A stretch of 64,000 bases of DNA, from IMG/VR virus record IMGVR_UViG_3300044712_000810, positions 186,001-250,000 of that record. One strand, given 5' to 3'. Under the pieces are notes generated by a model that did no database searches, was not told where the DNA came from, and was given only the letters and a program-made list of their open reading frames with translations. This document shows, piece by piece, positions 29,465 through 58,886 of this stretch. The number at the start of each line of letters is the position of its first letter. Position 1 is the first letter of the stretch. The translations under genes were made by a program, and so were the position numbers.

Positions 29465-29968
29465 TTATGCGCACCAGAAACACCAACAGTTTCCATGGCA
29501 ATCACTATGACAGTTACAGTTTCCATGACAGTTACTATGACAATCACCAGACCAGTTACAATCACTATGACAGTTACTATGACAGTCTGAGTGACAGTTA
29601 CTATGACAGTTTGAGTGACAGTTTGAATAATATGCATCACAAACACATGCAACTTCATCGGTATTAACATCAGACTTAATTAAGTTTAATGTAGTACCGG
29701 CGATAATTTCACCAGTAGAAACATTTGAATAACCAGTATGTGTTGCTATTGTTTCTGCTGCACTTCTAAGATTGTTAGTATCTGTTGTTGGAATAATTGT
29801 TCCAACTGTTGGTGACGGTATAGAAGATGTTGCCAATCCTCTACGAGTTTGTTCACGAACAATTGCATTCGCGACTTCAATATATGCGCCAGTTTGAATC
29901 ATACTTCCAGTACTTGTACCATAAGACCACACGGTGGCATTTGATGCACAAGGAGGTATTCTACCCAT
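29465..29968 (-). CDS. Protein with C-terminal (CHxx)n Cys-His repeat, candidate radical SAM substrate
   Basis: CVCDAYYSNCHSNCHSNCHSDCHSNCHSDCNWSGDCHSNCHGNCNCHSDCHGNCWCFWCA; N-part has repeated G.II....N.(L/I) units. Confidence 0.75.
   Translation of the reverse strand: MGRIPPCASNATVWSYGTSTGSMIQTGAYIEVANAIVREQTRRGLATSSIPSPTVGTIIPTTDTNNLRSAAETIATHTGYSNVSTGEIIAGTTLNLIKSDVNTDEVACVCDAYYSNCHSNCHSNCHSDCHSNCHSDCNWSGDCHSNCHGNCNCHSDCHGNCWCFWCA
29488..29625 (-). repeat. 12-bp tandem repeat encoding CHS(N/D)
   Basis: Plus-strand (A/G)TGACAGTTACT-like units repeated about nine times. Confidence 0.85.
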
Positions 29969-31202
29969 TATTATACTCCTTTTTAATATTTATAAATTCG
30001 TTCTTTTTATGTGATATAATTCTATTTAATATACATACACGTTGTTCAACGTTAAAATCATACCATTTATCATAATAATTTTCTTTATTGCTGGCATCAT
30101 ATTTATCTTTATTACATTTTACACAATATAAAGGTGAACAGTCGACACATTCATCATCTAGTTTTGTTGATGATTCATATTTATCATGTTCCATTTTACT
30201 CTTCATGAGATCATTATAGAAATCTAATTCTATATGTGATATCATATGATCTTTTTTATTTGGAGTATATAATGTTCCATGACACTTATATATAAATCCA
30301 TCAATATCTATTGTAAATAAATCTTTACCAGCAAAACAATTACCTATTTGTTTTTTCTCTAGTAACCATGAAAAGAATGGTTTGACATTACGATCCTTTT
30401 CCCAACGATCAAGTTCGAAGTGCATTATCTTATATATCTGTAATTCAAGATTATGTAATGCAAATCTAAATGATTTTTTGTCAAGTGCTGTAACAGATTG
30501 GCCACGTTCTAATGTTGGGCAATAGCCTTTCATTATATGTGGTGCATCAGGGAATGAATTCTGTAAATCATATATATCACAATATGATTCATATACGTAA
30601 TTTACACTTTTTAATGGTATTGTGCTTTTGATTGAATGTACAACGCCATATTTCATACAGTTTATAATATTTTCACGGACTTTGTCGCCGCAGATTCTAT
30701 TGTATTCGTTAATTGGATTACCATCGTAACTTATTTGAGTTATAAGTTTAGGTTCTCCAAATGCAGTCATGTGTTTTGAATAAAAAATCATATTCTCAAA
30801 AATATTTTCTAAATATATTCCATTAGTATATAGTGTGAATTCTACATTTTTAAAGTTTAAGAAGTATCGTAACATAAATTTGATTGCTGGATAATTTAAT
30901 GTAGGTTCGCCACCCCAAAATGTAATATTTAATACATCATAATTCTGTTTAAAATGATCAGTTTTAACTAATTGTTCGAGTTTATAACAAGTGAGATATA
31001 TTTGATCTTCACTAAAATAAAGTTTATCAAAATGTCCTTTCTCAAAACAATAAGAACATTTAGAATTACAGTCATTTGTAAGATTTATTTCAATTGTTAA
31101 ACGTCTAAGATTTGGTTTATTTGTAAATTTTGGTTTTTGATATAAATCTAACGCTGATGATATATATTTACGAAGTTCATCTTTATAATTAAATTCTAAC
31201 AT
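29961..31202 (-). CDS. Radical SAM/SPASM protein (anSME/peptide maturase-like)
   Basis: CNSKCSYC, FWGGEPTL, YTNG, CFAG..DG.IYKCH, C..C....C..C. Confidence 0.9.
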   Translation of the reverse strand: MLEFNYKDELRKYISSALDLYQKPKFTNKPNLRRLTIEINLTNDCNSKCSYCFEKGHFDKLYFSEDQIYLTCYKLEQLVKTDHFKQNYDVLNITFWGGEPTLNYPAIKFMLRYFLNFKNVEFTLYTNGIYLENIFENMIFYSKHMTAFGEPKLITQISYDGNPINEYNRICGDKVRENIINCMKYGVVHSIKSTIPLKSVNYVYESYCDIYDLQNSFPDAPHIMKGYCPTLERGQSVTALDKKSFRFALHNLELQIYKIMHFELDRWEKDRNVKPFFSWLLEKKQIGNCFAGKDLFTIDIDGFIYKCHGTLYTPNKKDHMISHIELDFYNDLMKSKMEHDKYESSTKLDDECVDCSPLYCVKCNKDKYDASNKENYYDKWYDFNVEQRVCILNRIISHKKNEFINIKKEYNNG

Positions 31203-32143
31203 TTCTTAAAGCTCCCAATCTCACTACCTTGATTATTGCATAAGTTACGGTAATTTTTAAAGAATACAGATTGATATGTATTATATTTAGGTCTTGCTCG
31301 AACACCTTCTTGTGGGACTAAATATATATCATTTGTCATCTTTGTAAGTTTAATACATTGATGTTCACAAATAGAACATACTTCCTGACACATTTTGATT
31401 TTGTATTTCTTGTATATTTTATTCATGTAACATGCTTCAAGAATATCTTTCAATTGATATGCATCAGCATCAGGATGATGATTATCTATTTCATTCCAGT
31501 TATGTGTAATAGAAAATCTATGAACATTCGGATAATATTCACACATATAAACCATATCATGAACAATATGATCTATATTTTGTTTATTTACAGTATATGC
31601 AATACCATAACGAATACCAGAATGTTTTAATATTTCTAATGCTTCTTCGATTTCTGATTTAGCTGATTGTTTATTTCCACGCCAAATACGTCTATCAGAA
31701 TGTGGACCATCATAACTAACTTGAACTAGAAATGTACTATTGTGTTTTGATGTAATTCTTTTATTTAATTCTAATAACTCATTGATATATTTCTTTACTA
31801 ATATACCATTAGTTTCTATCATAATATTCAAGTATCCATCTATTTTTGCGAATACTTGTTCCATAGTATATAATATAGTATCCATTCGCAGTAATGGTTC
31901 GCCACCAAAGAATAATAAACCAGTAGGTCCTTTAGTTCCTTCGCGTTTGATTATATTATCAATAAATGCATCAACTTCTTCTTTTGATGCATCGCGTTGG
32001 TAATCACCAAGTTCTTGTCTTTTTTCTTCTTCAAAACAATATTCACATGCTAAGTTACAACGAGTTGTAACATATATAATATTCATTTGGTGGCCGGTAA
32101 TCTTACTAGCATCTTCTTCAAATATTTGAGACGCTTTAACCAT
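31196..32143 (-). CDS. Radical SAM protein
   Basis: CNLACEYC, FFGGEPLL, ETNG, SYDG; short Cys cluster CQEVCSICEHQC. Confidence 0.9.
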   Translation of the reverse strand: MVKASQIFEEDASKITGHQMNIIYVTTRCNLACEYCFEEEKRQELGDYQRDASKEEVDAFIDNIIKREGTKGPTGLLFFGGEPLLRMDTILYTMEQVFAKIDGYLNIMIETNGILVKKYINELLELNKRITSKHNSTFLVQVSYDGPHSDRRIWRGNKQSAKSEIEEALEILKHSGIRYGIAYTVNKQNIDHIVHDMVYMCEYYPNVHRFSITHNWNEIDNHHPDADAYQLKDILEACYMNKIYKKYKIKMCQEVCSICEHQCIKLTKMTNDIYLVPQEGVRARPKYNTYQSVFFKNYRNLCNNQGSEIGSFKKC

Positions 32144-32152
32144 GAATTACTC

Positions 32153-32839
32153 CTACAAATATTTTAACAACTTGTTCTTATTTCCAAGTGTAAAAGTTGA
32201 TGTTTTAACTGCTAAATACATTAATGATACTAGGCGCGGATGTGTTAGTTTTATTTTTGATAGATTTGGTTGAATGATTGTATCAAAATATTTAATAACA
32301 TCATCTTCTACTGCTGTTTTATCTTTACACAGTGCAATAAAGTATGAACTAATTAAATATGATTTACGACTATCTTCATTTATTGTTATTAAATATTTAA
32401 CAATAGCATCAAATCGTCTATTATTAAGTAATATTTTATATTTAATACAATACCTATCAAGATAATACATTATACCATCAAACAATGCATTATCTGGAGC
32501 ATCACCAGACTTAATTATCTCTTCAACATATGATGTTGAAATATCAAAGTTATTAAGATTAACTAGACAAAACAAAATATCATGTAACCAATCACTTTGT
32601 GTGTATTTATCTTTTATTAATGTTTCTTTATTTACATTAAGAAAAGTGAGCGCATCATCAAATTTATTTTGATTTATAAGATCAAAATAATAATTAAACT
32701 TATCATTTCCACGTTTAGAGCTTAGATCTTCATGAATAATTTTCTTTTGCCAATCTTTTAAATATTTAATTGTAAACTTAATAAGTTTATTATATTTACC
32801 TGTATAAAATTCTGATTCATCCATAACTCTATTAATCAT
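32153..32839 (-). CDS. Hypothetical helical protein
   Basis: GGAG SD; 228 aa within the radical SAM cluster. Confidence 0.65.
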   Translation of the reverse strand: MINRVMDESEFYTGKYNKLIKFTIKYLKDWQKKIIHEDLSSKRGNDKFNYYFDLINQNKFDDALTFLNVNKETLIKDKYTQSDWLHDILFCLVNLNNFDISTSYVEEIIKSGDAPDNALFDGIMYYLDRYCIKYKILLNNRRFDAIVKYLITINEDSRKSYLISSYFIALCKDKTAVEDDVIKYFDTIIQPNLSKIKLTHPRLVSLMYLAVKTSTFTLGNKNKLLKYL

Positions 32840-32852
32840 TTTATTATCTCCA

Positions 32853-33437
32853 TTACTTAGTTTGGGACAACTGTTCCTTCACATAAGCGATAATAGCGTT
32901 TACTTCATTTTCGCATTCCGCATCTTGTTCTTTTGTGAGTCGAACCATTGGTCCTTTAATTCTTGCTTCTTTATTAATCCATGTATTCGAAGTGACACCT
33001 TCGTGACCACTTACTTGTAAATATGCTGCAACTTGTGGTGCAGGTTTGGTTTCTGGAATATATTTTAAACTTCCATCAGGATTTCTATCAGCGAATTTTT
33101 TGACCGGCTCTGGACATTGTGGACATCTTTCAACTGGATCATCACCACAATTACATGAACGTTTTTCAGGAACTACCGTTGGTGGTGTTTTTGATGGACA
33201 TGCACTACAACCAACAACTTCATCTGGTCCGTTTTTGGCATTTTGTTCTGCACAATCACACGAACCAAATGCTTTAGTAAATTCATAATTATAATCAAAT
33301 TCTGCACCAACTGTTTTAGCGCAGAAAAACATAATAGTTTCTGACATCATTGGATTTTTATCTTTGAAATACATTGCACCTTTCATTAAACTAGATAGTG
33401 CATCTAACATTTCGTCTGGGATTTGTCTTTCTTCCAT
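32853..33437 (-). CDS. Hypothetical Cys-cluster protein
   Basis: CDC, CSAC, CNC, CPQC in low-complexity centre; GGAGG SD. Confidence 0.65.
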   Translation of the reverse strand: MEERQIPDEMLDALSSLMKGAMYFKDKNPMMSETIMFFCAKTVGAEFDYNYEFTKAFGSCDCAEQNAKNGPDEVVGCSACPSKTPPTVVPEKRSCNCGDDPVERCPQCPEPVKKFADRNPDGSLKYIPETKPAPQVAAYLQVSGHEGVTSNTWINKEARIKGPMVRLTKEQDAECENEVNAIIAYVKEQLSQTK

Positions 33438-34543
33438 GATTTCTGTCCTCCAAATTTAGTGATTTGATCTGTAAAATATTTCTGGAATGGTTCAAAATCT
33501 TTAAGTAGATCAAAAAGTCTTAAAGATTCACGAATAGTAATTTTAGTTACTTCACAAAAACCATCTAATGGTTCTTTAATCCATTCACCATCACACTGTT
33601 TTAATTCCTGATTAAGACATCCTGTCATACAAACAAATTTAACTTCACAATCTTTGCATTTAGGAACAAAATCAGGGACTAATATATCAGGTCTAGAAAA
33701 TAAATCCATATTTTCAGGATACCATTCATTTGTTCTATAATTTAATATAGGATATTTATGTTCATGTGCAAATCTTCCACATGGATATGCATTTCCATCT
33801 GGAAAAAATGATATCATCCATGAACATGCTTCACATGCTCTTATTGATTTATTCCTAGATCCTAAAGCCAGCATAAATTCAAGTTTCTCTCGAAACATCG
33901 TTGGCATATTAGGTATTCCAGATTTCCAATATTCTACTATTTTATCAACTAATTGAGGACATGTTTTATTAAAAGTTTCAACACCTTCGGGTGTCCAACC
34001 TTCTTTAATAAAAGCAAAATCCATAAATGGCCATTGCAATCCTTCAATAAAAAAACGATAGTTGTCAACTAATGTTGACACATTATCATTGGATACCATA
34101 CAACGTGAACGTCCAAATTGTTTAAAGAATTGTATACGTTTCATATATTCAGTAAATGAATCTCCACCAGTTTGTAATGGTCTGTTGGTTTTATTCCAAA
34201 GTCCATCAAAACTTAATGTGAATCCAACATCGTGTGATTTAAGGTAGTCAAACTTCTCTTGATCCATTAATAGACCGTTGGTTGGGAATATAATACGAAC
34301 AATTCTTTCATCTTTGCCATATGTTTCAATGAAATATTTAATCAAATCATATCGAATCAATGGTTCACCACCAAAGAAAGCAATGACGGCAGTTTTATGA
34401 CCATAAACTCGTAAATATTCATCAAGATTAGACACGATTGTATCTAAATCTTCTTTAGTCATGTCATCTTTATCATGCTCAATATAACAATATTTGCAAT
34501 TCAAATTGCATTTTTGTGTTAGAATTACTTGTAATGTTAACAC
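33404..34543 (-). CDS. Radical SAM/SPASM protein (anSME/peptide maturase-like)
   Basis: CNLNCKYC, FFGGEPL, PTNG, SFDG, C..DG.AYPC, CKDC....VCMTGC. Confidence 0.9.
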   Translation of the reverse strand: MLTLQVILTQKCNLNCKYCYIEHDKDDMTKEDLDTIVSNLDEYLRVYGHKTAVIAFFGGEPLIRYDLIKYFIETYGKDERIVRIIFPTNGLLMDQEKFDYLKSHDVGFTLSFDGLWNKTNRPLQTGGDSFTEYMKRIQFFKQFGRSRCMVSNDNVSTLVDNYRFFIEGLQWPFMDFAFIKEGWTPEGVETFNKTCPQLVDKIVEYWKSGIPNMPTMFREKLEFMLALGSRNKSIRACEACSWMISFFPDGNAYPCGRFAHEHKYPILNYRTNEWYPENMDLFSRPDILVPDFVPKCKDCEVKFVCMTGCLNQELKQCDGEWIKEPLDGFCEVTKITIRESLRLFDLLKDFEPFQKYFTDQITKFGGQKSWKKDKSQTKC

Positions 34544-34555
34544 ATATACTCCTAT

Positions 34556-34816
34556 TTATTCACCATGACATGCAGTGTGACAATCTACATAAGGACCCAT
34601 ACATTCACATGTTTCATATTGTTCTTGAATTATTACATCTGATTTTTTATTATGGGCATCATATAATACTACAACTTTGATATATTCCATATGAGGACCA
34701 ATAAGACATTCAAATTTTGTATTTGAAAATCCATCTTTGATTTTCTGAATATAAGCTAACATTTTATCATGCGGCATACTTTTTTTAGGAATTAAAAATT
34801 CAGTAATAAGTTCCAT
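34556..34816 (-). CDS. Small protein with C-terminal CEC...CHTACH motif
   Basis: Ends TCECMGPYVDCHTACHGE. Confidence 0.65.
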   Translation of the reverse strand: MELITEFLIPKKSMPHDKMLAYIQKIKDGFSNTKFECLIGPHMEYIKVVVLYDAHNKKSDVIIQEQYETCECMGPYVDCHTACHGE

Positions 34817-36042
34817 TACAAACCTCTAAATTTTAAATATTCATCACGAAACTGATGTCGATAACAATCATTACAATTCTTACACTCATCAGGAAGTCTT
34901 TCTTTACCAAACATTGCACGACGTAAGTGTTGATATTCTAAACTATTCCATGCACTAAATATATCAGTACATGTATTTATATTTAATTCTTTATCAATTT
35001 CACTTAAATCATTAAAATATTGCAATGTACTACAACATGGTCTAACATTTCCTTTCGGATCAATATTAAACCGTGTCCACGGCGCATAACACCATGGCTC
35101 TTTTATTTCTTTATCTTTTAATTCGGCATAATATTCTTTTATTAAATCATTTATATGCCTATTAGGTAATGTTTTATTATATTTTTGTTTTGGTATTTTG
35201 GCCAAAAAATCTATATAAGGATTAGTTTTTGGAATTTCAATCTTATTTACTTCAATGTTTTTTGGTATTTCATAAACATAAGTATAAACTGAATTTCGAC
35301 GTTCATTTCGAATGAAATCAAGTTCAGTACTACTAAAATTATTAAATGTCATTGGAATATCGCGAACTTCATTATAGAAATTATTTAATACGTATAAATC
35401 TGTATCATCTATTTCATATTTCTTAAGTTCTTTCCAAAATCTACATTTTTGAAGTAACATTGTACTTGCTTTATATTCTTTACATATTTTATAGAATTCG
35501 TCTAAATACATTATACTATATTTAGTTATTAACATACTTAAAATTAAATTTACATTTGGTAGTTCTTTTTTAAGTAATTTTAGATTATATAAAACATTAT
35601 CTAAATTACCACCTCTTGTTTTCTCATATAAATCTTTTGAAGGTGCATCAATACTAACAATCATTGATTTAACATTTTCAAAATGTTTCAATTCGACCGT
35701 ATGAAACAATGTGCCATTTGTAGTTATATGGACATTATTGTTAGCATATGCTACGGTTGCCTGTAATTGTGGGTCAAGAAATGGTTCACCTTCAGCAGTT
35801 ATAAGAATGTGTTCACAGTTTTGTAAGAATGGTAATATTTTCAATTCAAAATTCATAGGTAATGCCATTCTTCGAAAATGACTATTGTCAGTATTTGAAT
35901 ACTTTGAATAATATGGACAATGAACACATCTAAGATTACATTTATTACTAACAAATAACATTAAACTTTGTGGATAACTATATATTATTTCTTTTTGTAA
36001 TGCAATCTCAAATAGATTTAATACTTTTAGTTTATCATTCAT
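34816..36042 (-). CDS. Radical SAM/SPASM(Twitch) protein, paralog of 5087..6337
   Basis: CNLRCVHC, EGEPF, TTNG, CYAPW..RPCC..CKNC. Confidence 0.9.
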   Translation of the reverse strand: MNDKLKVLNLFEIALQKEIIYSYPQSLMLFVSNKCNLRCVHCPYYSKYSNTDNSHFRRMALPMNFELKILPFLQNCEHILITAEGEPFLDPQLQATVAYANNNVHITTNGTLFHTVELKHFENVKSMIVSIDAPSKDLYEKTRGGNLDNVLYNLKLLKKELPNVNLILSMLITKYSIMYLDEFYKICKEYKASTMLLQKCRFWKELKKYEIDDTDLYVLNNFYNEVRDIPMTFNNFSSTELDFIRNERRNSVYTYVYEIPKNIEVNKIEIPKTNPYIDFLAKIPKQKYNKTLPNRHINDLIKEYYAELKDKEIKEPWCYAPWTRFNIDPKGNVRPCCSTLQYFNDLSEIDKELNINTCTDIFSAWNSLEYQHLRRAMFGKERLPDECKNCNDCYRHQFRDEYLKFRGL

Positions 36043-37700
36043 TATTCAAACCTTGTAGGTTTAATATTTAATTGTTTTTGAGCGTTGGTAATATACTCAT
36101 TATCTTTTCGATAATATGTTTTGATAATATCCATAACATGTTGTTTATTTTTACAACATTTATATAATGCGAACAATAAATGTTGTGGTATACCGCGATT
36201 GTATGGTATTAATAAATCAAATGCTGATTTATAAAGTCCTTTTTTATATCTTTCAATTTGATCATAATCAAATCTTTTTGATTCACGATATAAATCATAA
36301 TGAAATGTAACATTCTTTTCATTATTGTCTGTCAATACTTTATCATCTCCATCAAAGTTTTTATGTTTTTTGATAAAGTGTACTGGATCTATAATTAAAT
36401 CATACTTTTCTGGATTTGTGTAAAATTCGCTATTATATGTTAGATAAAAACTATTGATTGCCACTGTATTTACTATTTCTATATTTTTTAAGATAAAGTG
36501 AATTGTTTCACTAGTCGAATGTTCATCATCGTATGGTAAACCAAATATAAAGTTCAATAAAGTCCATATACCAGATTTATGGCACCAATAAGTACCCTCA
36601 AGTATTTGATCTTTAGTAACACCTTTATTAATATATTTTAACATACGGTTATTAACACTTTCTGCACCAAATGATAAATGTCTACATCCGGCTTCATAAC
36701 ACATTTTAAAGAAATCTTCATCAACAAACTTATACTGACATGAATTTGACCAAGTAACTTGTTTCATATTCTTACGAATAAACCAATTACACATTTCATC
36801 AGCAATCTTTCTTGATGGATTAATACATGTATCTTTAAAGAATATATTATTTACACCTTGATCAACTAATCGTTCAATATTATCAAATATATCTTGTGAT
36901 TTACCACGATGATAAGTCGCAGTTGATGAACTACAAAATGCACACTTATTAGTACATCCGTAAAATGTATTAAAAGATGCTTGAAAAAACCAATCAGATG
37001 GTATATTAAGACCTTCTTTTGGTATATTGTAATAATCGAGTATATAATTATAACTATATTTTAAATCTTGTGTATTTTTTGGTAAAATGCTAGACATGCG
37101 ATGTTCTTTATGTAAGCGTCCAGCATTTCCAACTTTATTATCGACTAATAATTGACGTAAAGCTTCTTCATTTGGAATAGTACCAATATGAAGTATATCA
37201 ATAAATGATTTATCTTCTAACTTTTTAATATGTGTTTGTAACATTGATGCGTTATAACCACCAACAACAATTTTTGAATCTGGATATACATACCTTAACC
37301 ATTTTAACAACATGATATTAAGATAACTGGTTGGTGATATATCTATTGTTGGAGCATCTTGATATGATACAATGGATGCTAATATATATTTATATTTTTT
37401 ATGTAGATTTAAATTATTATCTACAATGTTATGTATTTTAGCTGGCCATAATGGATGTTTGAATAATTCTATGGCATTATCAAAATCATGTGGATATTTA
37501 AAATTTTCACAAAAGTTTTCAAATGTAGTATATTTCTTTAATAAATATGCATCAAAATCATAATAATCTATATTATGATCTGATTTTAAATACTCTGCAA
37601 ACATTGCAGGAGCATAATGACTAAACTTTAATGGCTTATATAATGGATTTTCATATGTAAATCTTGTCGGCATTGATAAAATTAAAACGTCCGCTTTCAT
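36042..37700 (-). CDS. B12-binding-domain radical SAM protein (class B methyltransferase-like)
   Basis: N-terminal ~240 aa with KIVVGG; GCTNKCAFC, F.D, AGC..FGAES, FIFGLP; start set at MKADV. Confidence 0.8.
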   Translation of the reverse strand: MKADVLILSMPTRFTYENPLYKPLKFSHYAPAMFAEYLKSDHNIDYYDFDAYLLKKYTTFENFCENFKYPHDFDNAIELFKHPLWPAKIHNIVDNNLNLHKKYKYILASIVSYQDAPTIDISPTSYLNIMLLKWLRYVYPDSKIVVGGYNASMLQTHIKKLEDKSFIDILHIGTIPNEEALRQLLVDNKVGNAGRLHKEHRMSSILPKNTQDLKYSYNYILDYYNIPKEGLNIPSDWFFQASFNTFYGCTNKCAFCSSSTATYHRGKSQDIFDNIERLVDQGVNNIFFKDTCINPSRKIADEMCNWFIRKNMKQVTWSNSCQYKFVDEDFFKMCYEAGCRHLSFGAESVNNRMLKYINKGVTKDQILEGTYWCHKSGIWTLLNFIFGLPYDDEHSTSETIHFILKNIEIVNTVAINSFYLTYNSEFYTNPEKYDLIIDPVHFIKKHKNFDGDDKVLTDNNEKNVTFHYDLYRESKRFDYDQIERYKKGLYKSAFDLLIPYNRGIPQHLLFALYKCCKNKQHVMDIIKTYYRKDNEYITNAQKQLNIKPTRFE

Positions 37701-38406
37701 AAGACTTCCTATACTCAAGCATAATATGTTCACTGATATCTTTTACATACTTACAAAAAGTAGAATATGATAAACCTCTATTTTCAATTTGAATACAATA
37801 ATTCAAATTTCCAAAATGTTTTCGATCATGTGATACTGATATTATATAATTCATTTGTGTATGTCCACATTTATTCATAGCTTCTGACATTAATTGATCA
37901 AATACATACAAATCATATGAACTTGAATAAAAAATTACATATAATACACATCGATTATGACCTTCACATGATGATATTGTCTTCATTCCACAAATAAGAT
38001 TGATTGCATCACATAAAGGTTTAACATTTTTATCTATTTTATTTTTAGTATCGATATTTATCATATAATTTGGTCCAAACAAATCACCACTTGATGTTTG
38101 TTGTGGTAAATATTCACGATATTTAACTTGTTCATCGTCAGTTAATCTACGAATTTTAACATTATCAATACTTTTTAGAAATGTTTCCAAAAATGCTTTA
38201 AGTTTATCACCAAATAGTTCCGAAAATGGTGAAACAAAACAAACATTTTCAAAAATATGAACAAATTCTAAATCTTTATCATAATCTTCAGGAAATTCAC
38301 CAATATCAACTATAAATTTATTAAGAAGATCATTTAATTGATCTTTCCATTCATAATTTTCAGCAAATATTACAAACATCCGTCTAAATTCACAAATAGT
38401 TATCAT
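37651..38406 (-). CDS. Hypothetical protein with TYW3/Taw3-like T.SSC.GH motif
   Basis: IDKNVKPLCDAINLICGMKTISSCEGH resembles the D..I..L...IN...TTSSCSGR signature. Confidence 0.45.
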   Translation of the reverse strand: MITICEFRRMFVIFAENYEWKDQLNDLLNKFIVDIGEFPEDYDKDLEFVHIFENVCFVSPFSELFGDKLKAFLETFLKSIDNVKIRRLTDDEQVKYREYLPQQTSSGDLFGPNYMINIDTKNKIDKNVKPLCDAINLICGMKTISSCEGHNRCVLYVIFYSSSYDLYVFDQLMSEAMNKCGHTQMNYIISVSHDRKHFGNLNYCIQIENRGLSYSTFCKYVKDISEHIMLEYRKSYESGRFNFINADKIYI

Positions 38407-39902
38407 AAAACCTTCCTGTAATATTTATCAATCATATCTCTAACTATAGTTTTATCATTATACATATCATAAAGTGCAAATATTAAATGTTGTGGTACAC
38501 GCATATGATATGGATTTAGATAATTAAGAGATATATTGTGTAATTTTGTTTTATATTCTTCAATTTCATGAAAGTCGAGTCTATCAATTTCGCGATATGC
38601 GGGATATTGAAACTCTGTAGTTGGGTCTTCTTCAGGTTTGACTTGTAAAGTCTTGTCCTTATTCAATGATGGAATACGAACAATCGACACATTTTTATTA
38701 AATTCAAGACCATACTTGTGTGGGTTTTCATAAAAATCACTACCGGCGGTCATATAAAACCGACTAAGTGTAATTTCATCAATATGTTTTATATTTTTCT
38801 TTATTAGAGCAATAGTAGTGCCAACTGTTGTTTCATCATCATATGGAAACCCAATAATAAAATTAAGTAAATTCCATATACCAACTTCACTACTATCCTT
38901 AGTACGTTCAAGTATTTCATCTCTGTTTGTATTCTTATTAATATATTTCAACATATCATTATGAAGACTTTCAGCGCCAAAACATAGTATTCGGCAACCG
39001 GCATCATATAACATATGAAAAAAATCTTTACTAGTATTATGAAAACAACATGAATTTGACCATTTGATATTCAAATTCTTTTTAATAAACCAATTACATA
39101 ATCTTTCGGCATATTTTATAGATGGATTAACAGAACTATCTTTAAAGAATAAAGTATTTACACCTTGATCATATAATTTTAATATACAATCATACAATTC
39201 ATTCTCATCTGGTATACACAATTTACTTTGTTGCCGACAGTAGGCACATTTATTGGGACAACCACGAAATGATATGATTGATGATTGAAAAATGTATTTA
39301 TTTGGATTTGGCCGAAGATCTGGAAATCCATATTGATCTAAAATTTCTTTATATGAATATCTTAAATCATTTTGATTTTCAGGTAATATACTTGTGTAAA
39401 AATCATCTACATGATTATGGTTATTTGTACCATTTAATAAATTGTCAAGATCACACTTATCGTTGATATTTTTATTATATATAATATCAACGATATTTTT
39501 ATTAATATTTTTTTGTATCTTCAATGCTTCTTTTCCACCAACTATTATTTTTGCTGATGGGAATCGTTTTCTTAAATACTCTAAAATTAAAATATTCAAG
39601 TCAATTGTCTTATTTCTTCCCATCGAATGATCTTGACGATGAGGCAGACAAGAACATAATATATAATTGTATGATTCTTTTAAATTTAAAGAATCAAACA
39701 TTTCATTCAAATTTATATTATTACAATTTTGATATCGTTTTGATAATAATACATCAAGATCGTAATAATCAACAACATCATCTTTTAAGTATTTAGCAAA
39801 AAGAGATAATGCGTAACTACTAAATCTCATTGGAACTGAATTAATTTCATTTTTATCTAATGTAAATAAACAAGGCATAGTTAATAATAAAAACGTACGC
39901 AC
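38403..39902 (-). CDS. B12-binding-domain radical SAM protein (paralog of 36042..37700)
   Basis: KIIVGG, RGCPNKCAYC, AGC..FGAES, FIIGFP; GTG start behind AGGAGG. Confidence 0.8.
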   Translation of the reverse strand: MRTFLLLTMPCLFTLDKNEINSVPMRFSSYALSLFAKYLKDDVVDYYDLDVLLSKRYQNCNNINLNEMFDSLNLKESYNYILCSCLPHRQDHSMGRNKTIDLNILILEYLRKRFPSAKIIVGGKEALKIQKNINKNIVDIIYNKNINDKCDLDNLLNGTNNHNHVDDFYTSILPENQNDLRYSYKEILDQYGFPDLRPNPNKYIFQSSIISFRGCPNKCAYCRQQSKLCIPDENELYDCILKLYDQGVNTLFFKDSSVNPSIKYAERLCNWFIKKNLNIKWSNSCCFHNTSKDFFHMLYDAGCRILCFGAESLHNDMLKYINKNTNRDEILERTKDSSEVGIWNLLNFIIGFPYDDETTVGTTIALIKKNIKHIDEITLSRFYMTAGSDFYENPHKYGLEFNKNVSIVRIPSLNKDKTLQVKPEEDPTTEFQYPAYREIDRLDFHEIEEYKTKLHNISLNYLNPYHMRVPQHLIFALYDMYNDKTIVRDMIDKYYRKVL

Positions 39903-39951
39903 AACTCCTCCTAAATTGGGTGGACCCAAACAAGCGTCCACCCTTCACACA

Positions 39952-41727
39952 TTAACTAGCTGAATATAACCATGTTGTTCCAGAATAAATAAACTCTACT
40001 CTGGCCCATGCAACGTCAACTGTAAGATCTTCTGCGACACCGCGAATGGTTGAACCATTGCGTATAACTATAATATTGTTTGTAGCAAACATGCCTTTTT
40101 CATCTATTAAACATACACGATCACCTTGTGATGGTGATGCTGGAAGCGTAAAGTTAAAACCAGCAGTTGTTGTATCAGCAATAACATAATCTGATGCGAC
40201 TGCTGTATATGCTGCGCTTTTCTTAAGAATTGTCCAACCACCGCCGCCACCAGATGCTGAAACAACTCCAGATCCATCAATTGAAAGACCTGAACCAATT
40301 TTAATAACACCGGCAACCGATGCTGATGCAGTTGGAAGTGTTGCTGAAGTTAATACATCATTTCCACCAACTTGAAGTTTAGTTCCTGTCCAAGTAATGT
40401 TTGATGATGTTGTGAACTTTCTTGTTGAGTTATCAAAGTATGGAACACCATTATTTACTGGTGAATCTTCACGTGTGGCAACAACTTGTTGATCATTTAC
40501 CATACCAACTGTAAATGCATCTTTTGTTTCATCGAAAATAAATTTATAATCGGTGAGTGTTCCACGATCAACTTGAATACCAGCTTCACCATTTGTTACG
40601 CCGGCTCCAGTTTCACCAGAGTTTACTTCAATTAAGTTATCTTTTGCTGTAATTGAAGTAGTATTAACAGTTGTTGTTGTTCCACTGACTGTTAAGTTAC
40701 CTGTAATTGTTACATCACCAAGACCTGTGATTGTTTTTCCAGTAAAGTCAACAGGTGAATTAAATTTAACGGTTGATGCATTAAAGTTAGTTTCGCCTAT
40801 TGAAGTGAATTGTACTTGTGAACTTGTACCAGAAGCAACAAAACTAATAATACCACCGGATGATTGGTTTTGGAAAAGAATGTTTTTATTTGCATTATTT
40901 GATGGGACTGTTGTTTCGACTCCACCCTTAGCATTTGTTGTAACAGTAGAATCGGAAAGAAGATTTACATCACCTGTTCCAGTAGTTTTAACTGCTAAAT
41001 CTTGATCTATATCTGTTTTAATTGTAATGGTATTTGAAACATCTTCGATAACTTTCTTATCGTTAACATAAAGTGAACTTGCGCCAACACGAACTTCTGC
41101 TGCATAAATGTTAGCAAAACGATTTGTTGCAGACCCAAGGTTACGTGTATTATCACCATCAGGTAAAATATTACCAGTTACACGGTATGAACCATCAAGT
41201 TGATCTACTGCATCAAGAACACCAGTTGTTGCACCAATAGATAGATTATTACCAACTTTAACACCACCAAGTGCTGTTGCTGTTGCGATTGGTAATGTAT
41301 ATGAACCACCGCCAGTGCCAGTTCCCATACCAGCATAAGAATCACTAGCAGCAAAAACTACTGCTTTACCTCTTATTGCTTCTGTGAAACTTAAATTAAG
41401 ACTATTGGCATCAATAAAACTTGGTTGTGTATTTTGTAATTCATCATTTTCATCATATGCAAAAATACCAACAAGTTTACTATTTAAATTGTGTGTAATT
41501 TGCCATAGTGTTGATAGTGTTTCTTGTGTATGAATATAATATAGCGCTTTATTTGTGAGTGGATACCAAGTTGCAGTTCCTCCAATATTTGCATAAATAT
41601 AGAGGACTTGTTCCATGAAACATATTTGGCCGATTGTTGGTGAATCAGGAAATGAAGTAACATTGTCGAACATTACTGTTGCACCAGCTTTCATCTTTAA
41701 ATTCGCGCGTGTATTTAATTGTGCCAT
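39952..41727 (-). CDS. Tail-fibre protein
   Basis: YTLPIAT..LGGVKVG and LPTAS..GVIKIG repeats, LGS...RF..IY, GNLTVSGTTTTVN..DN.I, C-terminal F..TLPASP..GD domain. Confidence 0.8.
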   Translation of the reverse strand: MAQLNTRANLKMKAGATVMFDNVTSFPDSPTIGQICFMEQVLYIYANIGGTATWYPLTNKALYYIHTQETLSTLWQITHNLNSKLVGIFAYDENDELQNTQPSFIDANSLNLSFTEAIRGKAVVFAASDSYAGMGTGTGGGSYTLPIATATALGGVKVGNNLSIGATTGVLDAVDQLDGSYRVTGNILPDGDNTRNLGSATNRFANIYAAEVRVGASSLYVNDKKVIEDVSNTITIKTDIDQDLAVKTTGTGDVNLLSDSTVTTNAKGGVETTVPSNNANKNILFQNQSSGGIISFVASGTSSQVQFTSIGETNFNASTVKFNSPVDFTGKTITGLGDVTITGNLTVSGTTTTVNTTSITAKDNLIEVNSGETGAGVTNGEAGIQVDRGTLTDYKFIFDETKDAFTVGMVNDQQVVATREDSPVNNGVPYFDNSTRKFTTSSNITWTGTKLQVGGNDVLTSATLPTASASVAGVIKIGSGLSIDGSGVVSASGGGGGWTILKKSAAYTAVASDYVIADTTTAGFNFTLPASPSQGDRVCLIDEKGMFATNNIIVIRNGSTIRGVAEDLTVDVAWARVEFIYSGTTWLYSAS

Positions 41728-44107: not shown

Positions 44108-44475
44108 AGTGCCTCCAACATAGTTTTCATAACTTGAAATTGAAATTCTTCAAGTGTTTCAAAGTTACGAAGAACATACTCATACAATGTGAGTATGTGT
44201 CCTGTTGCATTTTGCACATAAACATATTCACCATGTATAGTTACATATTTATTATATATTAAATTCATAGCTATTTCTTGACGTTTTTCAATAGGAAATG
44301 TATTAAGAAATTCATTAAATATATTACATAAATGTTTAACATCTGCTGTATTTTTATAAATCGACAATTTCGGATTTGAGGATATCGATGTAGATATCAT
44401 CGAATTGTCCGTCATGAAGTTCCTCCAAGTAAGTAAACAATGGCCATGCCCGGTATTGACCAGTCTTTGATCCAA
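44104..44475 (-). CDS. Hypothetical protein with shared C-terminal tag
   Basis: Ends VMKTMLEAL; true start probably near 44370. Confidence 0.6.
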   Translation of the reverse strand: MDQRLVNTGHGHCLLTWRNFMTDNSMISTSISSNPKLSIYKNTADVKHLCNIFNEFLNTFPIEKRQEIAMNLIYNKYVTIHGEYVYVQNATGHILTLYEYVLRNFETLEEFQFQVMKTMLEAL

Positions 44476-44734: not shown

Positions 44735-44792
44735 ATTTCTATATATAACTATCAAATATTAAATTAAACATTCAACTAAATCATATAGAAAT
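44735..44792. promoter_or_regulatory. Divergent pair of ATATAGAAAT motifs
   Basis: Minus copy 44735-44744 and plus copy 44783-44792 at a strand switch. Confidence 0.65.
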
Positions 44793-44799
44793 ATTACTG

Positions 44800-45005
44800 A
44801 TGAAGAAGTGTCCCGCATTGTGTGCGACATTGACTTCATGTGGAGAGAATGCGGTATACCCGGCCAATTCATGTACCGCATTAATGTTCAAGATCTGCTG
44901 GAGGCACAATATGTCTCATGCTCGAGATCGTCCCTAGGAAGATTAAGAACTCAACCCAACTCAGCAATGGCTTTAAGGGGGTCTGCCGGCCCCCTTTTAC
45001 TTTTA
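44800..45005 (+). ncRNA. Candidate structured small RNA (~200 nt)
   Basis: GC-rich island between promoter motif and terminator; three stems at 44801-44838, 44848-44882, 44892-44929. Confidence 0.5.
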
Positions 45006-45019
45006 TTTTTGCACGTTTT

Positions 45020-45029
45020 ATATAGAAAT
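45020..45029 (+). promoter_or_regulatory. Putative phage promoter motif ATATAGAAAT
   Basis: Upstream of GGGGAG SD and ATG 45048. Confidence 0.6.
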
Positions 45030-45047
45030 AATGCAACTGGGGGAGAC

Positions 45048-45566
45048 ATGAAAAGACAAAAAAAGAAAACACAAAGTGTCCTTTTGGACAATGCATTATT
45101 AGATGCTTATCTTTCTATTTTATTAAAGATTAAAAATGACCGTTTATTCAATGCTGTAAATATTTTTTCAAAATATGGTTTCACCGTTGATCGACATAAC
45201 TCGTGGCGTGGCGAATTAATAACAAGACATACAACTAAAAAATATATATATTTAACACCAGATATACGTACATATTTATTAACCGATGAAATGTTAAAAG
45301 AATTAAATTTAGAACATTTAAAGACAACAAAAAGATCAAGTACAGGTGCCATCGAATTAAAATTTCGTCTTGTTTGTGGCGCTATAAATGGTATGTTCTC
45401 TGTTGAATATGATGACTATGAAAAATTATTCTATCAAGGACGTGAACAAATCTTTAGAAAAGAAAAACGAGTATCAGTAGGATATTTCTTTAATAGAATA
45501 TTCACCGACGAACAAAAAGAAACACTATCACTCGACCTTATGAAGGTTTGTCTGGAGAACATATGA
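45048..45566 (+). CDS. Hypothetical protein with shared C-terminal tag
   Basis: Start reassigned to MKRQK; ends LMKVCLENI. Confidence 0.7.
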   Translation: MKRQKKKTQSVLLDNALLDAYLSILLKIKNDRLFNAVNIFSKYGFTVDRHNSWRGELITRHTTKKYIYLTPDIRTYLLTDEMLKELNLEHLKTTKRSSTGAIELKFRLVCGAINGMFSVEYDDYEKLFYQGREQIFRKEKRVSVGYFFNRIFTDEQKETLSLDLMKVCLENI

Positions 45567-49756: not shown

Positions 49757-49772
49757 AATATTCTAAAATTTA

Positions 49773-49782
49773 ATATAGAAAT
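49773..49782 (+). promoter_or_regulatory. Putative phage promoter motif ATATAGAAAT
   Basis: Upstream of structured non-coding element. Confidence 0.6.
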
Positions 49783-49789
49783 TATAGTA

Positions 49790-49905
49790 ACGTAGTTAGC
49801 AATAACTTCCAGGAGGTATGACAAGGGTCATCCCCTCCTCCTCATACAGCAATGTGATGAGGTCTCCGACCGGTAGAAGCTCCCCGCAAGGGGAGCTTTT
49901 ATTGT
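49790..49905 (+). ncRNA. Candidate structured small RNA (~110 nt)
   Basis: Two hairpins plus terminator AGCTCCCC-GCAA-GGGGAGCT; GCAA tetraloops; own promoter motif. Confidence 0.5.
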
Positions 49906-49950: not shown

Positions 49951-50301
49951 TTACTCTGCTGCCTTGATGTCGGTCAGCAGATATTCTGTTTCAGGTGAAC
50001 ACAGAAGACCGGGTTTCACCTTGACCTGCTTGTAAGTCACAATGACTTTCTTGCCGGCGAGAGAATTTGCCTTCTTGATCAATGTGCCGTCATCGCCTTC
50101 GTATGAGAATGCCCACAGATTGGCCTGTTCGTTTGAACTCACGGCCATGTTCAACTGCCCTTCATAGGTCTTGCAGTTGCTTCCCTTTTTGGAGAACTTG
50201 ATCAGTGTTCCGCTTCGGAAACCTTCCGAATATGTGTTACCACAACTGACGGTAATAGCCGTCATAACCAAAACACAGAGAACCGCAATCAGTGTTTTCA
50301 T
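49951..50301 (-). CDS. Putative lipoprotein (YSEG.R.G...KFS.KG family)
   Basis: Signal peptide with lipobox-like TVSC; AAGGAGG SD; promoter motif at 50328-50337. Confidence 0.65.
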   Translation of the reverse strand: MKTLIAVLCVLVMTAITVSCGNTYSEGFRSGTLIKFSKKGSNCKTYEGQLNMAVSSNEQANLWAFSYEGDDGTLIKKANSLAGKKVIVTYKQVKVKPGLLCSPETEYLLTDIKAAE

Positions 50302-50327
50302 TAAATCCTCCTTGGATTTAATCAACA

Positions 50328-50337
50328 ATTTCTATAT
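50328..50337 (-). promoter_or_regulatory. Putative phage promoter motif ATATAGAAAT
   Basis: Exact copy upstream of lipoprotein gene. Confidence 0.6.
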
Positions 50338-54847: not shown

Positions 54848-54887
54848 ATAATTTTAATATTCAAGTATTTCATATAAAAATAATAGT

Positions 54888-55030
54888 AATGAACAAATGA
54901 TTTGGAGGTCCAGGATGGACGTGACTGACGGCGGCGATATTTCGATCGACTAGAAACTCACATTTCATTTTTGTATTCATTCCTTTTAGTTTAACTTTTT
55001 TGAACAAAAAGTGTCCGGGAGGGCACTTTA
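54888..55030 (+). other. Structured non-coding element or 12-aa minigene unit
   Basis: Promoter variant ATATAAAAAT at 54872; closing stem AATGAA/TTCATT; GGAGG then ATG..TAG 54915-54953; terminator-like hairpin 55008-55029. Confidence 0.35.
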
Positions 55031-55096
55031 TTTATATTTTTTTAATTTCTAAAAATATATAAAAATATTGAAAGTAAATAATTTTTTGGAGGGATT

Positions 55097-58586: not shown

Positions 58587-58886
58587 ATGAGAAATACTAT
58601 ACCAGTAAGATTCGTTTATGATAACAACGAAATTATTACATTTAGTTGTAATGGTATTAATTTAGCAGATAATTTAAATGGAAAATATGCAGATTTAATA
58701 TTAACCGATCGAAAATTAGTAAAATATAAACATGAGGATCATATATTTATTGATGGTATTATAAGTTATGATGACTGTATGTATATATTCGATGGATCAC
58801 TTAATAGATGTTCCGAAATTCTTAAAAAATATAATATATTCGATTTAGATTTATATAATTATCTTGAAAAAAGGTTTCCATCATGA
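58587..58886 (+). CDS. Hypothetical protein between the two beta-prime genes
   Basis: 99-aa ORF, ATGA overlap with catalytic fragment. Confidence 0.65.
   Translation: MRNTIPVRFVYDNNEIITFSCNGINLADNLNGKYADLILTDRKLVKYKHEDHIFIDGIISYDDCMYIFDGSLNRCSEILKKYNIFDLDLYNYLEKRFPS

What the first reader, a model, noticed from the sequence alone, without database searches (positions are those of the whole stretch)
44800..45005. Candidate ~200-nt structured RNA with its own promoter and terminator
Seen: a GC-rich island in AT-rich DNA, starting about 8 nt after ATATAGAAAT and ending at a GGGGG/CCCCC hairpin with T-run. Stems: TGAAG..CGCA/TGCG..CTTCA (44801-44838), AATGCGGTATA/TGTACCGCATT (44848-44882) and GATCT..GAGGCA/TGTCTC..AGATC (44892-44929). 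There is no good SD, and the next gene has its own promoter motif. I do not recognise it as tRNA, tmRNA, 6S or a ribozyme. Inference: a phage small RNA of unknown class, possibly a decoy or antitoxin mimic.
Basis: partly seen in the sequence, partly recalled or inferred. Interest (0 to 1): 0.6.

Follow-up and report, generated by a model that had tools for sequence, protein, structure and literature searches.

The report
Orphan small transcription unit in jumbo phage
A 315-kb soil phage carries a ~205-base GC-rich stretch with its own phage promoter and terminator but no normal gene; it is probably one of several small untranslated phage RNAs, but no relatives or RNA data exist to show what it does.

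Summary
The anatomy is real. The window lies in a 314,837-bp jumbo phage (33% GC) with terminal repeats. The motif before the island is the core of a phage promoter with 89 hits in the genome. It drives ordinary genes, tRNAs and several orphan units. The hairpin at 44975-44996 with its T-run is a standard terminator, and a second, stronger promoter then serves the next gene. So 44793-45003 is a separate ~205-nt transcription unit.

Two 5' hairpins fold better than shuffles (z -3.4, -3.0). The whole island folds no better than this phage's GC-rich coding genes.

No Rfam family, tRNA, protein homologue or DNA relative was found, and no RNA run holds the stretch.

A 48%-identical relative uses the same promoter and has 15 orphan promoter-to-terminator units, none similar in sequence.

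Most likely it is a fast-evolving, early-expressed phage small RNA of unknown function (about 0.5). Rivals are a leftover of a lost gene, a tiny peptide, or an origin-linked element. The genome's GC-skew minimum falls one base before the promoter. The decoy or antitoxin idea has no support.

The parts
44735..44744 (-). Core (ATATAGAAAT on the - strand) of the promoter for the leftward operon. First gene ATG at 44716; the operon includes the radical SAM cluster.
   Evidence: PWM score 31.8; AGGAGA SD and ATG 18 nt after the core.
44753..44796 (+). Promoter P1: T-rich box (TT..A..TTC, about 44764-44773) plus core ATATAGAAAT at 44783-44792. It lies back to back with the leftward promoter, 38 nt between the cores.
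   Evidence: PWM score 27.9, one of 89 hits in the genome against 1 in shuffled DNA. Inverted repeat I7.
44793..45003 (+). Predicted transcript, about 205 nt and 47% GC. The 5' end is inferred at 44793-44800. The 3' end is inferred in the U-run after the terminator.
   Evidence: The start site is bounded by promoters that sit 11-14 nt before tRNA genes, and by SD sequences as close as 6-7 nt after the core. Terminator. No RNA data.
44800..44839 (+). Hairpin 1: 16 bp in three segments, with two G-U pairs.
   Evidence: -15.7 kcal/mol, z = -3.4; pairing probability 0.87-1.0. The - strand version is weaker (-11.4).
44848..44882 (+). Hairpin 2: 11 bp with one U-G pair and a 13-nt loop (CCCGGCCAAUUCA).
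   Evidence: -13.0 kcal/mol, z = -3.0; pairing probability 0.84-1.0. The - strand version gives z = -1.5.
44809..44819 (+). First of three copies of the 11-mer TGT(C/A)CCGCATT. The others are 44848-44858 (- strand) and 44872-44882 (+ strand), which form hairpin 2.
   Evidence: Only one further copy with at most 1 mismatch in 315 kb. The alternative pairing 44808-19 with 44848-59 costs +7 kcal/mol.
44900..44937 (+). SD GGAGG (44900-04), ATG 44911, 8-codon ORF (MSHARDRP), stop TAG 44935-37. The SD and AUG lie in a 6-bp hairpin, GAGGCA 44901-06 with UGUCUC 44912-17.
   Evidence: Start-site score 4.3, the 98.7th percentile of all ATGs and above the median of real genes. Hairpin. With 7 ATGs in the unit, one such score by chance has p of about 0.09.
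44938..44974 (+). A/C-rich, mostly unpaired stretch before the terminator; a possible pairing region.
   Evidence: Mean unpaired probability 0.58. No outstanding target among 257 phage start regions.
44975..45015 (+). Intrinsic terminator (stem 44975-44996, 9 bp, 6 G-C) and its T-rich tail. The tail runs into the T-rich box of P2, forming a terminator-promoter cassette.
   Evidence: 40 of 89 promoters have such a hairpin directly upstream, against 5% of random sites.
45001..45050 (+). Promoter P2 (core 45020-45029), SD GGGGGAG, and ATG 45048 of the 172-aa gene with no known relatives.
   Evidence: PWM score 37.7; start-site score in the 96th percentile. The public gene call starts at ATG 44967, inside the terminator, which is probably too far upstream.

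Best explanation
Window 44793-45003 is an independent, monocistronic-style transcription unit of a jumbo phage. The phage encodes its own multisubunit RNA polymerase.

Proposed mechanism:
- A phage-specific promoter fires a few bases before 44800. It has the architecture of phiKZ-type early promoters: a T-rich box plus an extended -10-like core, ATATAGAAAT.
- The RNA folds into two stable 5' hairpins.
- It then runs through a weakly structured, A/C-rich stretch.
- It ends at a strong intrinsic terminator.
- The next gene is served by its own promoter directly behind that terminator.

The product is most likely a ~205-nt RNA that is not translated into a conventional protein and acts as RNA. 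It would be one of a set of fast-evolving, promoter-to-terminator small RNAs that this phage clade carries in its variable regions.

Shown here: the promoter family, the terminator, the two hairpins, the lack of a normal ORF, and the lack of any relative.
Inferred: that the RNA is made, that it is stable, and that it has a function (trans-acting regulator or protein-binding RNA). Neither target nor partner could be named.
For: Genome context:
- The genome is a 314,837-bp phage with terminal repeats. It has an RNA polymerase beta'-like gene at 58883-60847.

Promoter:
- 74 exact cores and 89 PWM hits, against 1 in shuffled DNA.
- Most hits are followed 18-30 nt later by SD+ATG. Four are followed by tRNA genes. 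P1 scores 27.9.

Terminator and cassette:
- Terminator found by the scan and by folding.
- 40 of 89 promoters sit directly behind such a hairpin, against 5% at random sites. The unit therefore fills a normal 'slot' between two cassettes.

Structure:
- Hairpins 1 and 2 have z = -3.4 and -3.0.
- All three non-Watson-Crick pairs in them are G-U on the + strand, and the + strand folds better than the - strand (z -2.6 against -0.6).

No convincing coding frame:
- The 45-aa ORF has GC1/2/3 of 0.37/0.54/0.52, against 0.45/0.34/0.25 for phage genes.
- Its frame log-likelihood is -13.5 and +0.9, below the 1st and 5th percentile of real 45-codon windows.
- It has no Pfam or NCBIfam match and no homologue.
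- The other open frame has no true homologue among 1.84 billion representative proteins.

Sibling units:
- In this genome: window 49773-49900, three in tandem at genome 301356-301970, and others.
- In a relative with the same promoter: 15 orphan units.

Precedent:
- 11 transcription units under 250 bp were read as sRNAs in giant phage 201phi2-1 (PMC11512511).
Against: - No RNA evidence. No RNA run holds the stretch; three DNA runs hold only identical phage DNA.
- No homologue, so no covariation test.
- The fold energy of the island is ordinary compared with GC-matched windows of this phage's GC-rich genes. The middle 90 nt are unstructured.
- A high-scoring SD+ATG sits inside it.
- The frame of the downstream gene stays open through the whole island (p = 0.028) and shows weak codon periodicity (log-likelihood ratio +7; the 5th percentile of genes but the 96th of ncRNA windows).
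- No outstanding antisense target in the phage.
- Orphan units are not conserved in sequence between relatives. That fits junk as well as fast evolution.
Confidence: 0.5

Rival explanations
1. Relic filler. The unit is a former gene slot between two terminator-promoter cassettes. Its ORF was lost or broken by recombination or frameshift. It may still be transcribed but has no function.
For: - The phage is built from terminator-promoter cassettes, like the PeSL cassettes that shuffle genes in T4-type phages (PMC2839356).
- A good SD+ATG opens only 8 codons.
- Another frame is open for 96 codons with weak coding periodicity.
- Orphan units are not conserved between relatives.
- Unit D (window 54882) likewise has an SD and a 12-codon ORF.
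- Fold energy is ordinary for GC-rich DNA of this phage.
Against: - Intergenic DNA here is 22-30% GC, and a decaying relic should drift that way, yet the island keeps 47% GC.
- The two hairpins are significant, and their mismatches are all G-U on the transcribed strand.
- No parent protein was found in any frame tested.
Confidence: 0.18
2. Small-protein gene. Either the 45-aa Cys-rich ORF (44800-44937) is translated from a nearly leaderless mRNA, or the 8-aa ORF from ATG 44911 is a leader or micro-peptide. The 45-aa product could be a lipopeptide or a substrate of the nearby radical SAM enzymes.
For: - ATG 44800 lies 8 nt after the promoter core, about where transcription should start.
- The ORF spans the GC-rich part.
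- Its N-terminus MKK...LTSC resembles a short lipoprotein signal with a lipobox (my reading of the sequence).
- It has five Cys, and the window holds at least 7 radical SAM genes, several SPASM-type.
- ATG 44911 has a first-rate SD.
Against: - Codon statistics are poor under both gene models, with GC1 below GC2.
- No SD before ATG 44800 (start-site score at the 61st percentile).
- No homologue, paralogue or family.
- No leaderless mRNAs were seen in phiKZ (PMC8244752).
- The radical SAM cluster has its own Cys-rich 86-aa candidate substrate at 34556-34816.
- An 8-aa ORF followed by a terminator and a fresh promoter has no obvious regulatory target.
Confidence: 0.12
3. DNA-level element at a replication origin or operator. 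Three 11-mers would bind a protein next to an AT-rich region at the genome's main strand switch. The transcript would be an origin-activating or priming RNA, or incidental.
For: - The genome-wide cumulative GC-skew minimum is at genome 230782, which is window 44782, one base before the P1 core.
- There are three copies of TGT(C/A)CCGCATT within 75 nt and only one other near-copy in the genome.
- The adjacent 160 nt are 22-25% GC.
- The third copy is not explained by RNA thermodynamics.
- Transcripts at T4 and ColE1 origins are a known principle (my own knowledge).
Against: - A skew minimum must fall in whichever divergent intergenic region bounds the largest block of leftward genes, so the coincidence is partly built in.
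- Two of the three 11-mers are simply the arms of hairpin 2.
- The flanking proteins have no recognisable DNA-binding or initiator domain, and the fold of the 172-aa protein was unusable (pLDDT 38.7).
- The island has no G-rich skew that would favour an R-loop.
Confidence: 0.08
4. Long 5' leader or attenuator of the rightward operon. P1 transcripts normally stop at 44996. Under some condition they read through into the 45048 gene, and the small RNA is a by-product.
For: - 8 of 11 sRNAs in 201phi2-1 come from premature termination in 5' UTRs (PMC11512511).
- Other units in this phage (genome 37234, 147751, 175314) are leaders with a hairpin before the ORF.
Against: - A very strong promoter (score 37.7) sits between the terminator and the gene, which makes read-through redundant.
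- No antiterminator pairing was found.
- The terminator and hairpins 1 and 2 are each stable, with pairing probability about 1.
- No riboswitch family matches.
Confidence: 0.07
5. N-terminal extension of the downstream gene. The island would be coding in the frame of GTG 44808 (252-aa ORF), or reached from ATG 44911 by a one-base shift.
For: - The frame is open for 96 codons upstream of ATG 45048 (p = 0.028; the maximum is 46 for 42 other genes).
- GC1/2/3 in that frame is about 0.52/0.37/0.54, like GC-rich genes of this phage.
- Log-likelihood ratio +7.
- The public gene call starts upstream, at 44967.
Against: - No start codon with an SD exists in that frame.
- The frame would have to run through a strong terminator and a top-scoring promoter.
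- No protein relative exists; the only hits are tandem-repeat artefacts.
- The 172-aa gene has its own promoter, SD and ATG.
Confidence: 0.05

Closest known systems
Intergenic and 5'UTR-derived small RNAs of giant phages phiKZ and 201phi2-1, mapped by dRNA-seq and ONT-cappable-seq (PMC11512511, PMC8244752)
   Same: Both are jumbo phages with their own multisubunit RNA polymerase. Their early promoters have an extended -10-like box and a T-rich upstream part. Both carry transcription units under 250 nt in which a terminator follows a start site with no ORF. Function is unknown in both.
   Different: There is no sequence or structure similarity. The polymerase beta' is only about 25% identical to that of cultured jumbo phages. 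Those RNAs were seen as transcripts, whereas this one is only predicted. One of theirs is conserved across genera; this one has no relative at all.
PeSL cassettes (promoter-early stem-loop) of T4-type phages (PMC2839356)
   Same: Both have a strong early promoter joined to a stem-loop terminator, repeated many times. The cassettes bracket small genes of unknown function in variable regions. Here 40 of 89 promoters have the hairpin directly upstream.
   Different: The promoter sequence differs, and probably the polymerase too. No mini-circles or recombination events are shown here. The slot discussed holds no ORF.
Short promoter-proximal terminated phage transcripts such as lambda 6S RNA (pR'-tR') and oop RNA, and the origin transcripts of T4 (my own knowledge, not tested)
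   Same: A roughly 200-nt untranslated RNA defined by a promoter and an intrinsic terminator. Here it lies at a major divergence point and GC-skew minimum.
   Different: There is no antiterminator protein or site, no antisense overlap with a gene, and no origin evidence beyond skew and three short repeats.
Dual-function sRNAs and leader-peptide RNAs (SgrS/SgrT, RNAIII/hld, cat/erm leaders; my own knowledge)
   Same: A structured RNA that also carries a well-formed SD and a short ORF.
   Different: The ORF is only 8 codons. No downstream gene is translationally coupled to it, and no stalling motif is known.
Phage RNA counter-defences: RNA anti-CRISPRs, viral sgRNAs (bioRxiv 10.64898/2026.06.01.729453), pseudo-ToxI
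   Same: A small phage RNA with its own promoter and terminator in a variable early region.
   Different: There is no CRISPR-repeat, tracrRNA or ToxI match, even at E up to 10, and no tandem repeats. The direct repeat is only 11 nt. The host and its defences are unknown.

Membership tests
Promoter family of this phage clade (T-rich box, about 9 nt, TTTC-ATATAGAAAT-A) | Match to the position weight matrix built from the genome's own sites, at a score that shuffled DNA does not reach | tested here: met
   P1 scores 27.9 and P2 scores 37.7. There are 89 hits above 14 in the genome, against 1 in shuffled DNA. The same core occurs 65 times in relative G001.
Intrinsic (factor-independent) terminator | G+C-rich hairpin directly followed by a U-run | tested here: met
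   44975-44996: 9 bp, 6 G-C pairs, 4-nt loop, tail TTTTACTTTTAT. -16 kcal/mol, z = -2.5.
Any Rfam 15 family (tRNA, tmRNA, 6S, RNase P, riboswitches, ribozymes, group I/II introns, CRISPR repeats, tracrRNA, ToxI, Y RNA and others) | Covariance-model score at or above the family's gathering threshold | tested here: not met
   No match in the window at gathering score. With E up to 10 there is only noise at 15-18 bits against thresholds of 45-57. Over the whole genome only tRNAs match.
tRNA / tmRNA | Cloverleaf or tmRNA fold recognised by ARAGORN | tested here: not met
   No gene in the window. The genome's 32 tRNAs lie elsewhere.
Structured non-coding RNA in the strict sense | Base pairs kept by compensatory changes among homologues | not testable with these tools
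   No homologue was found in any of these searches:
- cultured phages;
- five related IMG/VR records, by BLAST and by covariance model;
- pattern scans of viral, metagenome and genome collections;
- sequencing runs.
Structured non-coding RNA in the strict sense | Folding energy beyond what the local sequence composition gives | tested here: inconclusive
   z = -2.6 for the whole island and -3.4 / -3.0 for hairpins 1 and 2 against dinucleotide shuffles. Against GC-matched windows of the phage's GC-rich genes, 14% (90 nt) and 57% (179 nt) fold as well.
Protein-coding gene of this phage | SD-led start, codon periodicity like other genes, and a homologue or family match | tested here: not met
   - 45-aa ORF: no SD; log-likelihood ratio -13.5 / +0.9; no homologue.
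- 44808 frame: no SD-led start; log-likelihood ratio +7; no true homologue.
- ATG 44911 has an SD but only 8 codons.
RiPP precursor of the neighbouring radical SAM/SPASM enzymes | Small ORF next to the maturase gene, family match or repeated Cys motif, on the same operon | tested here: not met
   The ORF is 3 kb from the cluster, on the other strand. It has no NCBIfam or Pfam match and no paralogue. The cluster has its own 86-aa Cys-rich ORF at 34556-34816.
Replication origin | Iterons or initiator boxes plus an AT-rich unwinding region, at the skew minimum, with an initiator gene nearby | tested here: inconclusive
   Skew minimum at window 44782. Three 11-mers. AT-rich flank. No initiator-like neighbour. 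The skew coincidence is partly forced by gene orientation.

The most novel reading that the evidence does not exclude
The unit could be an origin-coupled RNA. It would be a short, early, untranslated transcript fired from the back-to-back promoters at the genome's global GC-skew minimum. It would run across three copies of an 11-mer found almost nowhere else in the genome, and would activate or prime bidirectional replication of a phiKZ-like jumbo phage, a group for which no origin is defined. More broadly, the many non-homologous promoter-to-terminator mini-units of this clade could be a pool of fast-evolving early RNAs with real roles such as host takeover or counter-defence, rather than cassette debris.
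Probability: 0.1. Interest if true: 0.75.

Novelty: new member of a known kind. Interest (0 to 1): 0.4.

Why it matters
Small RNAs of lytic phages, and of jumbo phages in particular, are barely explored. Only a handful of transcript maps exist, and almost none of the RNAs has a function.

This genome offers a clean, sequence-only way to list candidates. It has a sharply defined phage promoter (89 sites, conserved in a relative whose polymerase is only 48% identical) paired with standard terminators. That yields a short list of orphan units in each phage.

If the units are functional, they are a fast-evolving RNA layer of early infection. If they are debris, they record how terminator-promoter cassettes shuffle genes outside the T4 group.

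The position of this unit at the genome's skew minimum also gives a concrete place to look for a replication origin in this phage clade.

The finding is a well-delimited hypothesis, not a discovery. It needs one RNA experiment.

Tried and rejected
**Searches for relatives, all blank**
- Rfam at gathering and at E up to 10 and ARAGORN: nothing but tRNAs elsewhere in the genome.
- BLAST against 50,697 phage records.
- BLAST and a single-sequence covariance model against five related IMG/VR records.
- Flanking proteins in viral contigs and in the 5.8-billion-cluster protein set: only the phage itself.
- A gapped pattern for hairpin 2 in viral and metagenome contigs gave 71 and 120+ loci (151 were fetched and compared). 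None resembles the rest of the element, so they are chance hairpins.
- Two patterns in 185,579 species genomes: none.

**Sequencing runs**
- One likely source run and two runs with short identical pieces of the flanking genes. There was no variation and no RNA (1,301 letters were laid).

**Protein searches**
- The exhaustive search of the 44802-45047 frame gave three hits, all tandem-repeat proteins whose scores are inflated by identical repeats. A single repeat gives pairwise E = 2e-5, which is meaningless in a library of 2.4e11 residues. The contig of the best hit is not on record.
- The 45-aa ORF has no word-sharing candidate.

**Other tests that gave nothing**
- Antisense target scan over 257 phage start regions: the best duplexes were no better than with shuffled RNA ([timed out], 80).
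- A 22-nt similarity (19/22) between 44879-44900 and 44327-44348 would let the RNA pair inside the mRNA of a leftward gene. I left it as a probable chance match (local E about 0.04).
- Alternative pairing of the three 11-mers as a switch: it costs +7 kcal/mol and is not populated.
- CRISPR mini-array: the 63-nt-spaced repeat is only 11 nt.
- TAG recoding through the phage's CUA-anticodon tRNA: TAG ends 29 of 177 SD-led genes, and reading it through gains the least ORF length of the three stops. Code 11 stands, and the mini-ORF would gain only 3 codons.
- Neighbour annotation (Pfam, PHROGs, PADLOC, NCBIfam, ESM Atlas): no function for either flanking gene.
- AlphaFold model of the 172-aa neighbour: pLDDT 38.7, unusable, so no fold search was run.

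Full report
**What the window is**

The window is bases 186001-250000 of a 314,837-bp virus record with direct terminal repeats, judged complete. Its GC content is 33%. It encodes 32 tRNAs and an RNA polymerase beta'-like protein at 58883-60847. That protein is only about 25% identical to those of cultured jumbo phages (Yersinia, Vibrio, Staphylococcus, Bacillus). It is 45-54% identical to many metagenomic proteins. The DNA comes from a rhizosphere metagenome. Two other runs, one rhizosphere and one freshwater, hold short identical pieces.

**Checking the observation**

The GC island is real. It reaches 46-51% GC at 44800-44999, against 22-31% on either side.

The motif ATATAGAAAT at 44783-44792 is the core of a promoter family:
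- There are 74 exact copies in the genome. Nearly all have a T-rich box (TT..AT.TT) about 20 nt upstream and TTTC just before the core.
- A weight matrix gives 89 hits, against one in shuffled DNA.
- Most hits are followed, 18-30 nt after the core, by a strong SD and ATG. Four are followed by tRNA genes 11-24 nt downstream. That bounds the start site to the first few bases after the core.
- Three copies sit at this locus. One points left (core 44735-44744) and serves the operon that begins at ATG 44716. P1 (44783-44792) points into the island. P2 (45020-45029, score 37.7) serves the gene at ATG 45048.

The hairpin at 44975-44996 with its T-run is picked up by the terminator scan. It belongs to a general design: 40 of 89 promoters have such a hairpin directly upstream, against 5% of random sites. 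The phage is therefore built from terminator-promoter cassettes, much like the PeSL cassettes of T4-type phages (PMC2839356). The finding is the content of one slot between two cassettes.

**Structure**

- Hairpin 1 (44800-44839) and hairpin 2 (44848-44882) fold better than dinucleotide shuffles (z = -3.4 and -3.0).
- Both have pairing probabilities near 1.
- Their three non-Watson-Crick pairs are all G-U on the + strand, and the + strand folds better than the - strand.
- Compared with GC-matched windows from this phage's own GC-rich protein genes, the island's folding energy is ordinary. 14% of 90-nt windows and 57% of 179-nt windows fold at least as well.

'Structured RNA' therefore rests on two hairpins and a terminator, not on an unusual global fold.

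**Coding potential**

GGAGG at 44900-04 lies six bases before ATG 44911. That start scores in the 98.7th percentile of all ATGs and above the median real gene. The ORF stops after eight codons. With seven ATGs in the unit, one such score by chance has p of about 0.09.

The 45-aa ORF from ATG 44800 begins about where transcription should start. Against it:
- It has no SD.
- Its GC by codon position is inverted (0.37/0.54/0.52, against 0.45/0.34/0.25 for phage genes).
- Its frame log-likelihood falls below the 1st and 5th percentile of real gene windows under two models.
- It has no family, paralogue or homologue.

The frame of the downstream gene is open for 96 codons upstream of ATG 45048. Shuffles give p = 0.028, and the maximum among 42 other genes is 46 codons. 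The frame shows weak periodicity, with a log-likelihood ratio of about +7. That is the 5th percentile of genes and the 96th of ncRNA windows. However, it has no SD-led start. It would have to run through a terminator and a top-scoring promoter. An exhaustive search of 1.84 billion representative proteins gave only tandem-repeat artefacts.

No frame passes as a gene. None is strictly excluded.

**Relatives**

None was found by any route, so covariation cannot be tested.

Architecture, however, is conserved. The nearest large IMG/VR relative (285,572 bp, beta' 48% identical) has:
- 65 exact copies of the same promoter core and 55 matrix hits;
- 15 promoter-to-terminator units without an SD-led ORF of 30 aa or more before the terminator, six of them followed at once by the next promoter;
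- two such units in tandem 0.7-0.9 kb from its own skew minimum.

In the present genome the same strict filter finds six units. By eye there are more:
- window 49773-49900;
- three in tandem at genome 301356-301970, of 189, about 140 and about 195 nt, up to 61% GC and -77 kcal/mol;
- genome 5953, 240882 and 265044.

None of these matches Rfam. None resembles another unit or anything in the relative.

**Other features of the locus**

- The genome-wide cumulative GC-skew minimum is at genome 230782, which is window 44782, one base before the P1 core. This is the main point where leftward and rightward genes diverge, so the coincidence is partly forced. It is still the natural place to look for an origin.
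- Three copies of TGT(C/A)CCGCATT lie at 44809 (+), 44848 (-) and 44872 (+). Only one other copy with at most one mismatch exists in 315 kb. Two of them are the arms of hairpin 2. The third could pair with 44848-59, but at a cost of 7 kcal/mol.
- No outstanding antisense target was found among 257 phage start regions.
- The flanking genes have no relatives or recognisable domains.

**Verdict**

The unit is real as a piece of genome design. The best reading (about 0.5) is an early-expressed small RNA of about 205 nt that is not a conventional mRNA. It is comparable to the intergenic small RNAs mapped in phiKZ-like giant phages (PMC11512511, PMC8244752), but with no homology to them or to anything else.

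The rivals cannot be separated without RNA, ribosome or comparative data:
- a relic of a lost gene (0.18);
- a tiny peptide (0.12);
- an origin or operator element (0.08);
- a leader or attenuator (0.07);
- an N-terminal extension of the next gene (0.05).

The 'decoy or antitoxin mimic' suggestion has no evidence for or against it. Novelty: a new member of a known kind. Interest is moderate.

Noticed in passing
window 49764-49900: A second orphan unit. Promoter core at 49773-49782, then about 115 nt at 49-51% GC, then a terminator at 49879-49897. It holds an AGGAGG sequestered in a hairpin by CCUCCU, and no credible ORF. It faces the terminator of the convergent lipoprotein-like gene at 49951-50328.
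   Followed up: partly
genome 301356-301970 (locus L028, about 11956-12570): Three tandem units. Each has its own promoter core and terminator. They are 189, about 140 and about 195 nt, up to 61% GC, and fold to -77, -65 and -58 kcal/mol. The third carries repeated CACCACC motifs. No Rfam match even at E up to 1.
   Followed up: partly
whole genome G000 and relative G001 (loci L222-L236): A phage promoter consensus (T-rich box, then TTTC-ATATAGAAAT-A) has 89 hits in this genome and 55 in a relative whose RNA polymerase beta' is only 48% identical. 45% of sites sit directly behind a terminator hairpin, giving PeSL-like cassettes outside the T4 group.
   Followed up: yes
window 44782 (genome 230782): The global minimum of cumulative GC skew of the 315-kb genome falls in the back-to-back promoter region. 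The maximum is at genome 56844. This is a possible replication origin and terminus, or simply the main switches of gene orientation.
   Followed up: partly
window 5087-6337 and 29961-39941, - strand: At least seven radical SAM genes lie in one long leftward operon. Several have SPASM/twitch domains resembling peptide maturases (PapB-like, E = 1e-37, below the family cut-off). Two are B12-binding methyltransferase-like. An 86-aa ORF with a Cys-rich C-terminus (34556-34816) lies between two of them. A tail-fibre-like 591-aa protein (39952-41727) heads the cluster.
   Followed up: partly
genome 290747-290821: A tRNA with anticodon CUA (amber suppressor; ARAGORN labels it 'Pyl'). TAG still ends 16% of SD-led genes, and reading it through gains little, so there is no sign of genome-wide recoding.
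   Followed up: partly
window 44967-45047: The public gene call for the downstream protein (199 aa) starts at ATG 44967, inside the terminator hairpin and upstream of promoter P2. The promoter, SD and spacing point to ATG 45048 (172 aa).
   Followed up: yes
window 54882-55035: Another promoter-led unit with a good SD and only a 12-codon ORF. An AT-rich stretch follows, then a terminator and a weak promoter before the next gene. The layout matches the finding and may be a decayed gene slot.
   Followed up: no
window 44327-44348 and 44879-44900: A 22-nt direct repeat (19/22 identical) between the island and the coding region of a leftward gene. The predicted RNA could pair with that gene's mRNA. 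This is probably chance (local E about 0.04).
   Followed up: no
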